From assembly GCF_006345805.1 (NCBI RefSeq), contig NC_043010.1:6386001-6450000 (forward strand): a stretch of 64,000 nt of DNA, given 5' to 3'. The translations under genes were made by a program, and so were the position numbers. The notes beneath the pieces are model-generated. The model was given only the letters and a program-made list of their open reading frames with translations, searched no databases and was not told the origin of the DNA. Numbering within the stretch: the first letter of the stretch is position 1; each line of letters starts with the position of its first letter. Of the stretch, positions 17,637 through 18,790 are shown in pieces. Origin of the DNA: Octopus sinensis. Its lineage: Eukaryota.

Positions 17637-18790
17637 GCATTCTAAGTTCTTTGTTTGCAATGCATGATCTTGTTGGTATCAAATTTCTGGCAAGCGGGTG
17701 GTCGCTTGATGCTGCAGAGCCGCATCTTGATCTTGGCAACCAGAAGTTCATGGTCAGATCCACATATTTTGGTCATATTATGTAGAGAAAATCCATCATG
17801 CTTGGAATGGTCAGTGGCAAGAGAGGAAGAGGCCGACCAAGAACCCACTGGCTTGACACCATCAAGAGTGACATTATGTAGAGAAAATCCCTGGAGAAGG
17901 ACATCATGCTTGGAATGGTCAGTGGCAAGAGAGGAAGAGGCCGACCAAGAACCCACTGGCTTGACACCATCAAGAGTGACATTATGTAGAGAAAATCCAT
18001 CATGCTTGGAATGGTCAGTGGCAAGAGAGGAAGAGGCCGACCAAGAACCCACTGGCTTGACACCATCAAGAGTGACATTATGTAGAGAAAATCCCTGGAG
18101 AAGGACATCATGCTTGGAATGGTCAGTGGCAAGAGAGGAAGAGGCCGACCAAGAACCCACTGGCTTGACACCATCAAGAGTGACATTATGTAGAGAAAAT
18201 CCATCATGCTTGGAATGGTCAGTGGCAAGAGAGGAAGAGGCCGACCAAGAACCCACTGGCTTGACACCATCAAGAGTGACATTATGTAGAGAAAATCCAT
18301 CATGCTTGGAATGGTCAGTGGCAAGAGAGGAAGAGGCCGACCAAGAACCCACTGGCTTGACACCATCAAGAGTGACATTATGTAGAGAAAATCCATCATG
18401 CTTGGAATGGTCAGTGGCAAGAGAGGAAGAGGCCGACCAAGAACCCACTGGCTTGACACCATCAAGAGTGACATTATGTAGAGAAAATCCCTGGAGAAGG
18501 ACATCATGCTTGGAATGGTCAGTGGCAAGAGAGGAAGAGGCCGACCAAGAACCCACTGGCTTGACACCATCAAGAGTGACATTATGTAGAGAAAATCCAT
18601 CATGCTTGGAATGGTCAGTGGCAAGAGAGGAAGAGGCCGACCAAGAACCCACTGGCTTGACACCATCAAGAATGACATGGGAATGGCCATAGCCAATCTG
18701 AAAGAAGCGACCCAGGATAGAACTGGCCGGAGGACACTGATCCATCGAGTAACCGAGAGTCGACTTTGACTGAGCGGATAGATAGATAGA
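17637..18790 (+). mobile_element. 5'-truncated, 5'-inverted RTE (BovB-like) LINE insertion with internal tandem amplification
   Basis: Plus frame YFGHIM*RKSLEKDIMLGMVSGKRGRGRPRTHWLDTIKNDMGMAIANLKEATQDRTGRRTLIHRVTESRL is an RTE ORF C-terminus, followed by a (GATA)n tail. Minus strand 17666-17764 gives CGSDHELLVAKIKMRL, the end of the APE endonuclease. TSD tataccaRggag at 17625-17636 and 18791-18802. Confidence 0.9.
17777..18676 (+). repeat. Tandem array of 9 units (96 bp x6, 108 bp x3; order S-L-S-L-S-S-S-L-S)
   Basis: Unit starts at 17777, 17873, 17981, 18077, 18185, 18281, 18377, 18473, 18581. Long units carry the extra ctggagaaggac. The only substitution seen is g/a near the end of the last unit. 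Confidence 0.97.

What the first reader, a model, noticed from the sequence alone, without database searches (positions are those of the whole stretch)
17777..18676. Nine-fold, two-variant tandem amplification of the RTE C-terminal coding segment
Seen: 900 bp of 96-bp (S) and 108-bp (L) units in order SLSLSSSLS, identical apart from the 12-bp indel and one g/a in the last unit. Every unit carries the same in-frame TAG, and unit junctions share only a 2-nt AT microhomology. The first unit is S although L is the ancestral coding form. Inference: either repeated RT template jumps on the same RNA (or a small RNA circle) during one insertion, or a very young minisatellite seeded by a LINE and shuffled by unequal exchange. 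It is a snapshot of satellite birth from a retroelement, inside the most complex junction in the window.
Basis: partly seen in the sequence, partly recalled or inferred. Interest (0 to 1): 0.75.

Follow-up and report, generated by a model that had tools for sequence, protein, structure and literature searches.

The report
Intronic octopus minisatellite from RTE tail
A 108-bp piece of a dead RTE retrotransposon, sitting in an intron of an octopus protocadherin gene, was duplicated before two octopus species split and later grew from 2 to 9 copies in one of them: an ordinary transposon-derived minisatellite, not a product of one retrotransposition event.

Summary
They are identical except for a 12-bp indel and one G>A at 18672. 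Each unit carries TAG, and each junction has a 2-nt AT microhomology.

The window is most likely Octopus sinensis. The array lies in an intron of a protocadherin gene, inside a 5'-inverted, 5'-truncated RTE/BovB-like insertion bounded by a 12-bp target-site duplication.

The orthologous O. vulgaris locus has the same insertion and the same unit junction, but only two units, both L. Its first unit still has the ancestral CGG (Arg) and its second has TAG. So the seed duplication predates the species split. The growth from 2 to 9 units and the S deletion happened, most parsimoniously, in the sinensis lineage. That growth is recent: about 11 substitutions are expected in 900 bp since the split, and one is seen.

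This rules out nine units made by RT template jumps in one insertion.

Transposon-derived minisatellites are a well-known kind. Interest is low. Copy number in the assembly could not be checked against reads.

The parts
17777..18676 (+). Minisatellite: 9 tandem units (S=96 bp, L=108 bp) in the order SLSLSSSLS. Unit starts are 17777, 17873, 17981, 18077, 18185, 18281, 18377, 18473 and 18581. The units derive from the RTE ORF C-terminal segment (IM*RKS[LEKD]IMLGMVSGKRGRGRPRTHWLDTIKSD).
   Evidence: The orthologous O. vulgaris array has 2 L units.
18672..18672 (+). The only substitution in the array: G>A in the last unit (AGT Ser > AAT Asn). It is derived, because both O. vulgaris units and the other 8 units have G.
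17765..17776 (+). First 12 nt of the direct (sense) RTE 3' piece (TATTTTGGTCAT = YFGH). Nucleotide homology to the relative L001 starts here.
18677..18769 (+). Rest of the RTE ORF after the array (MGMAIANLKEATQDRTGRRTLIHRVTESRL), with the stop codon TGA at 18767-18769.
18770..18790 (+). Short RTE 3' end with a (GATA)n microsatellite tail and no poly(A).
   Evidence: Comparable short-repeat tails occur in L001 (AAG)n and L002 (GACAAGGT)5.
17666..17761 (-). Inverted RTE piece encoding GSDHELLVAKIKMRLCSIKRPPACQKFDTNKI, the end of the endonuclease domain plus linker. Its element-5' end abuts the direct piece.
   Evidence: It is 40% identical over 32 aa (E=3e-4) to the RTE copies L037 and L039, where the motif lies about 1.94 kb upstream of the tail on the same strand.
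17637..17672 (+). 36-nt inverted (snap-back) copy of the flanking target DNA 17582-17617 (35/36 match). Its last 7 nt (CAAGATC on the other strand) overlap the inverted RTE piece and serve as the priming microhomology.
17625..17636 (.). Left target-site duplication, TATACCAGGGAG.
18791..18802 (.). Right target-site duplication, TATACCAAGGAG (11/12 match to the left copy).
16781..17624 (+). Older non-LTR retrotransposon fragment into which the RTE inserted. It is interrupted by a SINE at about 17243-17400 and continues after the right TSD (18791 to about 19300).
   Evidence: The reading ...NLECFRLYQGEYNKWGYNQ is continuous across the inferred empty site.

Best explanation
The array is a single-locus, transposon-derived minisatellite (VNTR) in an intron of a protocadherin gene of Octopus sinensis or a near-identical genome.

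Step 1, shown in structure, mechanism inferred. An RTE/BovB-like LINE inserted into an older LINE fragment. The insertion was about 360 bp, 5'-truncated and 5'-inverted, and is bounded by a 12-bp TSD. The top-strand end first snapped back on itself for 36 nt. It then primed on the RTE RNA through a 7-nt microhomology. This is a twin-priming-like event.

Step 2, shown. A 108-bp segment of the sense RTE tail was duplicated in tandem at a 2-nt (AT) microhomology before the O. sinensis / O. vulgaris split.

Step 3, shown. The second copy acquired TAG (from CGG) and CTT (from CTC) before the split.

Step 4, the species difference is shown, the direction and mechanism are inferred. In the sinensis lineage one unit lost 12 bp, giving S. 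Second-copy-type units were then amplified and reshuffled by replication slippage and/or unequal sister-chromatid exchange, with at least 6 events. The result is SLSLSSSLS, with the original first unit lost or converted.

Step 5. One G>A mutation then hit the last unit.

No function is implied. The array is neutral intronic DNA.
For: Species identity. The protocadherin exon at 26515-29004(-) is 100% identical over 790 aa to O. sinensis XP_029644516.1, 99.7% to the O. vulgaris protein and 98.6% to the O. bimaculoides protein.

Orthology. The O. vulgaris locus L004 is collinear with window 1-38792. It contains the same TSD, snap-back copy, inverted RTE piece, direct tail and unit junction, but exactly 2 L units.

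Order of events. The O. vulgaris first unit has CGG/CTC and the second has TAG/CTT. The sinensis L unit equals the second O. vulgaris unit except for one vulgaris-private CpG>TpG change.

Recency of the expansion. Flanking substitution divergence is 44/1789 = 2.46%. That predicts about 11 substitutions in 900 bp per lineage since the split. One is seen (Poisson P(<=1) = 2e-4).

Number of events. A breadth-first search over block duplications and deletions, allowing a single L>S event, needs at least 6 events to go from LL to SLSLSSSLS.

Local origin.

Known kind. TE-derived minisatellites and satellites are well documented (PMC9659126, PMC5932611).
Against: The copy number and the perfect identity of the units rest on one assembly that I could not check against reads. 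Short-read polishing can homogenise tandem units.

The first sinensis unit already carries TAG only 6 nt inside the array edge. Plain unequal crossing-over cannot produce this. It needs a microhomology-mediated deletion, a gene conversion reaching the array edge, or an assembly artefact.

Only two species could be compared. An ancestral long array that contracted in O. vulgaris is less parsimonious but not excluded.
Confidence: 0.8

Rival explanations
1. All nine units were made in a single retrotransposition event by repeated RT template jumps on one RNA or on a small circle.
For: The array starts only 12 nt from the 5' end of the direct cDNA piece. The same insertion shows other template switches: a snap-back copy and twin priming. 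The junction microhomology is only 2 nt.
Against: The orthologous O. vulgaris insertion is the same event, with the same TSD and junctions, and has 2 units, not 9. Its two units differ at 4 sites, and the sinensis units all carry the derived states of the second one. Interleaved S and L units would require six identical 12-nt skips. The near-absence of substitutions shows that the copies are far younger than the insertion.
Confidence: 0.02
2. Only the seed duplication (1 to 2 units) arose during the insertion, through an RT or repair-polymerase template switch close to the 5' junction. Later growth was ordinary minisatellite dynamics.
For: The duplication breakpoint lies 12 nt from the inversion junction and uses a 2-nt microhomology. 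In O. vulgaris the u1-u2 divergence (4/108) is not significantly lower than that of duplicates certainly made at insertion, the TSD plus snap-back copy (4/48; Fisher p=0.25).
Against: The same numbers are equally compatible with a later duplication. Proximity to the junction has roughly a 10% chance expectation in a tail of about 230 bp. RTE-tail arrays in other taxa (L002, L003) are not adjacent to the 5' truncation point.
Confidence: 0.25
3. The nine-unit array, or its perfect homogeneity, is an assembly or polishing artefact. The real allele has fewer units, or more diverged ones.
For: The units are 100% identical. The first unit unexpectedly carries TAG. No reads were available.
Against: A 900-bp array is well within long-read length. 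The irregular S/L order and the single edge-unit SNP are not what collapse or over-polishing typically gives. An independent assembly of the sister species confirms that the duplication is real.
Confidence: 0.1
4. The common ancestor already had a long array, and O. vulgaris contracted to two units.
For: Minisatellites contract as well as expand. Only two species were compared.
Against: O. vulgaris keeps the ancestral first unit (CGG) plus one second-type unit, which is the minimal post-duplication state. It has no S unit. The sinensis units are too alike to be older than the split unless they are continuously homogenised.
Confidence: 0.08
5. The array belongs to a mobile RTE or SINE subfamily that carries an internal VNTR and is present at many loci.
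For: Independent arrays of the same RTE tail segment exist in other organisms.
Against: There is no second copy in 166 kb of octopus DNA. The copy number differs between orthologous loci. The left flank of the array continues into RTE sequence for only 12 nt and then into the inversion junction.
Confidence: 0.02

Closest known systems
Transposon-derived minisatellites and satellites, e.g. LINE ORF2-derived satellites and Alu-derived minisatellites (reviewed in PMC9659126). Also TE tandem dimers as seeds of satellites (McGurk & Barbash 2018, PMC5932611).
   Same: A TE fragment supplies the monomer. A two-copy seed is followed by amplification through unequal exchange or slippage. Copy number differs between close species.
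   Different: The seed here is an internal 108-bp microhomology duplication within one insertion, not a double insertion. The array is a single 0.9-kb intronic locus, not a dispersed or megabase-scale satellite.
Twin priming / 5'-inverted LINE insertions (Ostertag & Kazazian 2001, PMC311219; 5' truncation and inversion as standard LINE outcomes, PMC4245944).
   Same: There is a TSD around the whole insertion. The inverted 5' piece has its element-5' end against the direct 3' piece. There is microhomology where the second primer annealed.
   Different: The element is an RTE, not L1. About 1.9 kb of the element is missing between the two pieces. The second primer first made a 36-nt snap-back copy of flanking DNA.
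RTE/BovB-clade LINEs of octopus (RTE-2_OV and RTE families in O. vulgaris and O. bimaculoides: PMC9115989, PMC13282606).
   Same: The C-terminal ORF tail is of the BovB/RTE type (YFGHIMRR..SLEK..MLG...GRPR.RW.D). The 3' end is a short tandem repeat. The host genus is the same.
   Different: This is a dead fragment of about 230 bp plus about 95 bp. Its relation to the named octopus families could not be tested, because no sequences of those families were available here.

Membership tests
Minisatellite / VNTR | Head-to-tail repeats with a unit of roughly 10-100+ bp at one locus | tested here: met
   Nine units of 96 or 108 bp, contiguous.
Minisatellite / VNTR | Copy number varies between related genomes | tested here: met
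   9 units in the window versus 2 at the orthologous O. vulgaris locus.
Minisatellite / VNTR | Copy number is polymorphic within a population | not testable with these tools
   No reads and no second O. sinensis genome were available.
RTE/BovB-clade non-LTR retrotransposon (fragment) | ORF C-terminal tail homologous to RTE tails | tested here: met
   P0001 is 73% identical, and its contig has an RVT_1 gene just upstream. There were 11,144 representative hits, including BovB-like tails that I recognised from memory.
RTE/BovB-clade non-LTR retrotransposon (fragment) | 3' end is a short tandem repeat, not poly(A) | tested here: met
   GGATA(GATA)3 directly before the right TSD.
RTE/BovB-clade non-LTR retrotransposon (fragment) | Single ORF with an N-terminal AP endonuclease followed by RT; RT phylogeny | tested here: inconclusive
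   Only a 32-aa endonuclease-end motif is present. It matches RTE copies L037 and L039 at the expected distance. Pfam and PDB searches gave nothing. The copy has no RT domain.
Twin-priming (5'-inverted) LINE insertion | One TSD bounds both the inverted and the direct pieces | tested here: met
   TATACCAGGGAG / TATACCAAGGAG at 17625-17636 and 18791-18802. Also present in O. vulgaris.
Twin-priming (5'-inverted) LINE insertion | The inverted piece comes from further 5' in the element and lies head-to-head with the direct piece | tested here: met
   The endonuclease-end piece on the minus strand abuts the tail piece on the plus strand, with 3 nt between them.
Twin-priming (5'-inverted) LINE insertion | The two pieces are nearly contiguous in the element (small gap or overlap) | tested here: not met
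   About 1.9 kb of the element is missing between them, judged from the spacing in L037 and L039. This locus is therefore a variant of the classical picture.
Single-event RT template-jump concatemer | All units are created in the insertion event, so every descendant of that insertion has the same array | tested here: not met
   Same insertion, 2 units in O. vulgaris versus 9 here.
Dispersed satellite / mobile arrayed subfamily | The same array or junction at many unlinked loci | tested here: inconclusive
   None in 64 kb + 102 kb of octopus DNA. No octopus genome collection was available for a genome-wide search.

The most novel reading that the evidence does not exclude
The RTE reverse transcriptase, or the repair polymerase finishing the insertion, made the seed duplication in the same messy event that produced the snap-back copy and the inversion. 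On this reading the RTE C-terminal coding segment is intrinsically prone to seeding minisatellites. Independent arrays of the same segment occur in unrelated animals: 108 bp x3 in L002, 156 bp x5 in L003, 63 bp x7 in P0003, and P0128. LINE integration would then be a direct, recurrent source of minisatellite seeds.
Probability: 0.12. Interest if true: 0.45.

Novelty: new member of a known kind. Interest (0 to 1): 0.2.

Why it matters
It is a tidy, datable two-species example of how a TE fragment becomes a minisatellite. The seed duplication is older than the O. sinensis / O. vulgaris split, and the burst to nine units is recent and lineage-specific. It could serve as a species or population marker in the O. 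vulgaris complex. It is also a caution for annotators, because the array creates 341-456-aa spurious ORFs. It does not reveal a new mechanism or function.

Tried and rejected
- Searching the 5.8-billion-protein set with the 456-aa ORF that runs through the array on the minus strand found nothing, not even the ORF itself. Array-bearing loci in other assemblies could not be found that way.
- An exact look-up of the window's protocadherin ORF and of isoform X2 failed.
- The O. bimaculoides and O. sinensis gene records are on file, but their ranges exceed 100 kb, so no DNA was returned. No third species was obtained.
- Pfam and PDB searches with the 39-aa inverted piece and with the host LINE fragment gave no meaningful hit.
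- L005, the contig encoding relative P0008, is itself a 5'-truncated copy and did not help with the endonuclease end.
- Rfam found nothing in the window.
- I considered that RTE-tail arrays might form at the 5' truncation point in general. L002 and L003 carry about 120-140 bp of RTE upstream of their arrays, and 0 of 61 unbiased metagenomic RTE-tail loci have a tandem array in the coding tail. I dropped the idea.
- I considered dating the seed duplication relative to the insertion. The counts are too small: 4/108 versus 4/48, p=0.25.

Full report
OBSERVATION

- There are nine contiguous units of 96 bp (S) or 108 bp (L) in the order SLSLSSSLS, 900 bp in all.
- S lacks CTGGAGAAGGAC. Apart from that, the units are identical except for one G>A at 18672 in the last unit.
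- In the RTE reading frame each unit reads IM*RKS[LEKD]IMLGMVSGKRGRGRPRTHWLDTIKSD, with TAG in every unit.
- The duplicated segment starts with AT, and the sequence after the array also starts with AT. The junction GAGTGAC|ATTATG therefore carries a 2-nt microhomology.
- The unit occurs nowhere else in the window.
- It is by far the largest and cleanest minisatellite in the window.

WHERE THE WINDOW COMES FROM

- The 832-codon ORF at 26512-29010(-) is a protocadherin with six cadherin repeats.
- Its first 790 residues are 100% identical to O. sinensis protocadherin-18 isoform X3 (XP_029644516.1). They are 99.7% identical to the O. vulgaris protein and 98.6% to the O. bimaculoides protein.
- The window is therefore most likely O. 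sinensis.
- The gene spans more than 80 kb, and its isoforms diverge after residue about 790.
- The array lies 7.8 kb downstream of the large exon, inside the gene's range and antisense to it. It is most likely intronic.

WHAT THE REPEAT IS MADE OF

- The unit plus the 3' flank encodes the C-terminal tail of an RTE/BovB-type LINE ORF.
- The closest relative, P0001, is 73% identical. It lies on a contig with an RVT_1 gene just upstream, and it has the L form (KSLEKDIMLG).
- An exhaustive HMMER search found 11,144 representatives with this tail.
- The element ends with TGA at 18767-18769 and a (GATA)n tail, with no poly(A).
- Nucleotide homology to the relative starts at 17765, only 12 nt before the array.

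THE SURROUNDING JUNCTION

The insertion is bounded by a 12-bp target-site duplication: TATACCAGGGAG at 17625-17636 and TATACCAAGGAG at 18791-18802. Reading inward from the left TSD:
- 17637-17672 is a 36-nt inverted copy (35/36) of the flanking DNA at 17582-17617.
- 17666-17761 on the minus strand encodes GSDHELLVAKIKMRL...FDTNKI.
  - This peptide matches two metagenomic RTE copies (L037 and L039) at 40% over 32 aa, E=3e-4.
  - In those copies the motif lies about 1.94 kb upstream of the tail, at the end of the endonuclease domain.
  - It also resembles the BovB SDHELLIAKFRLKL motif. That resemblance is from my memory and is a lead only.
- The snap-back copy and the inverted RTE piece share 7 nt (CAAGATC).
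- Three nucleotides (ACA) separate the inverted piece from the direct tail.

The host of the insertion is an older LINE fragment whose reading (...NLECFRLYQGEYNKW...) is continuous across the inferred empty site.

The simplest reading is a twin-priming-like event. The structure is shown. The mechanism is inferred.
1. The cleaved top strand snapped back on itself.
2. It then switched to the RTE RNA through the 7-nt match and copied about 90 nt.
3. The bottom-strand cDNA, meanwhile, copied only the last 230 nt or so of the RNA.

Twin priming and 5' inversion are standard LINE outcomes (PMC4245944, citing Ostertag & Kazazian 2001). The large internal gap and the snap-back copy make this a variant of the classical picture.

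THE DECISIVE COMPARISON

The O. vulgaris locus L004 (GCA_951406725.2, OX597827.1) is collinear with window 1-38792. It contains the same TSD, snap-back copy, inverted piece, direct tail and unit junction. Its array has exactly two units, both L.

| Feature | O. vulgaris unit 1 | O. vulgaris unit 2 | All O. sinensis units |
|---|---|---|---|
| Unit positions 7-9 | CGG (GHIMRRKS, no stop, the RTE consensus) | TAG | TAG |
| Unit positions 37-39 | CTC | CTT | CTT |
| Site matching window 18672 | G | G | G, except A in the last unit |
| Form | L | L | S or L |

The sinensis L unit is identical to O. vulgaris unit 2 apart from one vulgaris-private CpG>TpG change.

What follows from this:
- The seed duplication predates the species split.
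- The TAG arose in the second copy before the split.
- L and G are ancestral.
- The S deletion is not present in O. vulgaris, so it most likely arose in the sinensis lineage.
- All nine sinensis units descend from the second copy.

TIMING OF THE EXPANSION

- Flank divergence between the two species is 44/1789 = 2.46%.
- A 900-bp array that had existed since the split should have collected about 11 substitutions in the sinensis lineage.
- One is seen (Poisson P(<=1) = 2e-4). The expansion is therefore recent, or the array is being continuously homogenised.
- A breadth-first search shows that at least six events (one 12-bp deletion plus five block duplications or deletions) are needed to turn LL into SLSLSSSLS.

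MECHANISM AND RIVALS

- The data fit ordinary minisatellite dynamics: replication slippage and/or unequal sister-chromatid exchange acting on a two-unit seed.
- They contradict the idea that nine units were laid down by RT jumps in one insertion. The same insertion has two units in the sister species, and the S/L interleaving would need six identical 12-nt skips.
- Whether the first duplication itself was made during the insertion cannot be settled.
  - In favour: it lies 12 nt from the inversion junction.
  - In favour: in O. vulgaris the two units are not significantly less diverged (4/108) than duplicates certainly born at insertion (TSD plus snap-back, 4/48; p=0.25).
  - Against: the counts are tiny.
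- An assembly artefact is possible for the copy number or the homogeneity, but not for the duplication itself.

ONE UNEXPLAINED DETAIL

The first sinensis unit already has TAG six nucleotides inside the array edge. Plain unequal crossing-over cannot achieve this. Three explanations remain open:
- a deletion between the ATTATG of the first unit and that of a later unit;
- gene conversion reaching the array edge;
- homogenisation by short-read polishing.

IS THERE ANYTHING GENERAL?

The representative search surfaced independent tandem arrays of the same RTE tail segment in other organisms:
- L002: 108 bp x3, 98% matches.
- L003: 156 bp x5, 93% matches.
- P0003: 63 bp x7.
- P0128.

Such multi-copy proteins are pushed to the top of the list by score summation. 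Among 61 metagenomic RTE-tail loci collected without that bias, none has a tandem array in the coding tail. The L002 and L003 arrays are not at the 5' truncation point. I therefore treat the recurrence as the expected background of tandem duplication.

COMPARISON WITH WHAT IS KNOWN

- Transposon-derived minisatellites and satellites, including ones from LINE ORF2, are well documented (PMC9659126).
- Two-copy TE seeds amplified by unequal exchange have been shown at population scale in Drosophila (PMC5932611).
- RTE LINEs are known and recently active in Octopus (PMC9115989, PMC13282606).
- This locus is a new member of a known kind.

VERDICT

- Interest is low (0.2).
- The locus is useful mainly as a clean, datable example and as a possible species or population marker.

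Noticed in passing
window 17243-17400: A SINE with an (ATG)n tail (…GGGCATCCAGCCGTAGAAACACTGCC…GGAAAGCGGACGCTAAATGATGATG…) is present here but absent from the orthologous O. vulgaris site. That site reads GGTGAT|CAAGACTGG. The insertion most likely occurred in the sinensis lineage. Related copies lie at 37864-37999 and 3942-4108.
   Followed up: partly
window 17625-18802: The RTE insertion is a twin-priming-like 5'-inverted insertion with a 12-bp TSD. It also has a 36-nt snap-back copy of flanking DNA and a 7-nt priming microhomology. About 1.9 kb of the element is missing between the inverted and direct pieces.
   Followed up: yes
window 17582-17617 / 17637-17672 and the O. vulgaris equivalents in L004: At one site the two arms of the snap-back repeat differ reciprocally between species. 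In sinensis arm 1 has C and arm 2 has T. In vulgaris arm 1 has T and arm 2 has C. This could reflect two parallel changes or conversion between the arms.
   Followed up: no
window 26512-29010 (-): Large first exon of a protocadherin gene: signal peptide, six cadherin repeats and a TM segment. It is 100% identical to O. sinensis protocadherin-18 isoform X3 over 790 aa. The array and the RTE lie in the downstream intron, antisense to the gene.
   Followed up: yes
window 17642-19012 (-), 17655-18692 (+), 17773-18798 (-): The array creates spurious ORFs of 456, 345 and 341 codons in non-RTE frames. These could be mis-called as genes. The 456-aa ORF has no counterpart in the 5.8-billion-protein collection.
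   Followed up: partly
window 9076-9482, 36379-36773, 40832-41250, 41555-41979, 51748-52185, 54133-54552, 59511-59937, 60983-61287: A dispersed repeat of about 410 bp is present in at least 8 copies in the window and in many copies in the O. vulgaris locus (80-96% identity in cross-species matches). It is probably a high-copy SINE or MITE. I did not identify it.
   Followed up: no
L002 2953-3273; L003 3571-4352; proteins P0003, P0128: Independent tandem amplifications of the same RTE C-terminal coding segment occur in unrelated organisms: 108 bp x3, 156 bp x5, 63 bp x7 and units of about 70 aa x4. They are rare overall: 0 of 61 unbiased RTE-tail loci have one.
   Followed up: partly
window 19610-20079, 20641-20936, 21843-22800 and elsewhere: Very long AAT/ATT microsatellite tracts (up to about 160 repeats) lie just downstream of the RTE locus. 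The window as a whole is 33% G+C. The tract lengths differ from those in O. vulgaris.
   Followed up: no
window 42149-42519: A 184-bp x2 tandem duplication (90% identity). It is another two-unit seed of the kind that preceded the RTE array.
   Followed up: no
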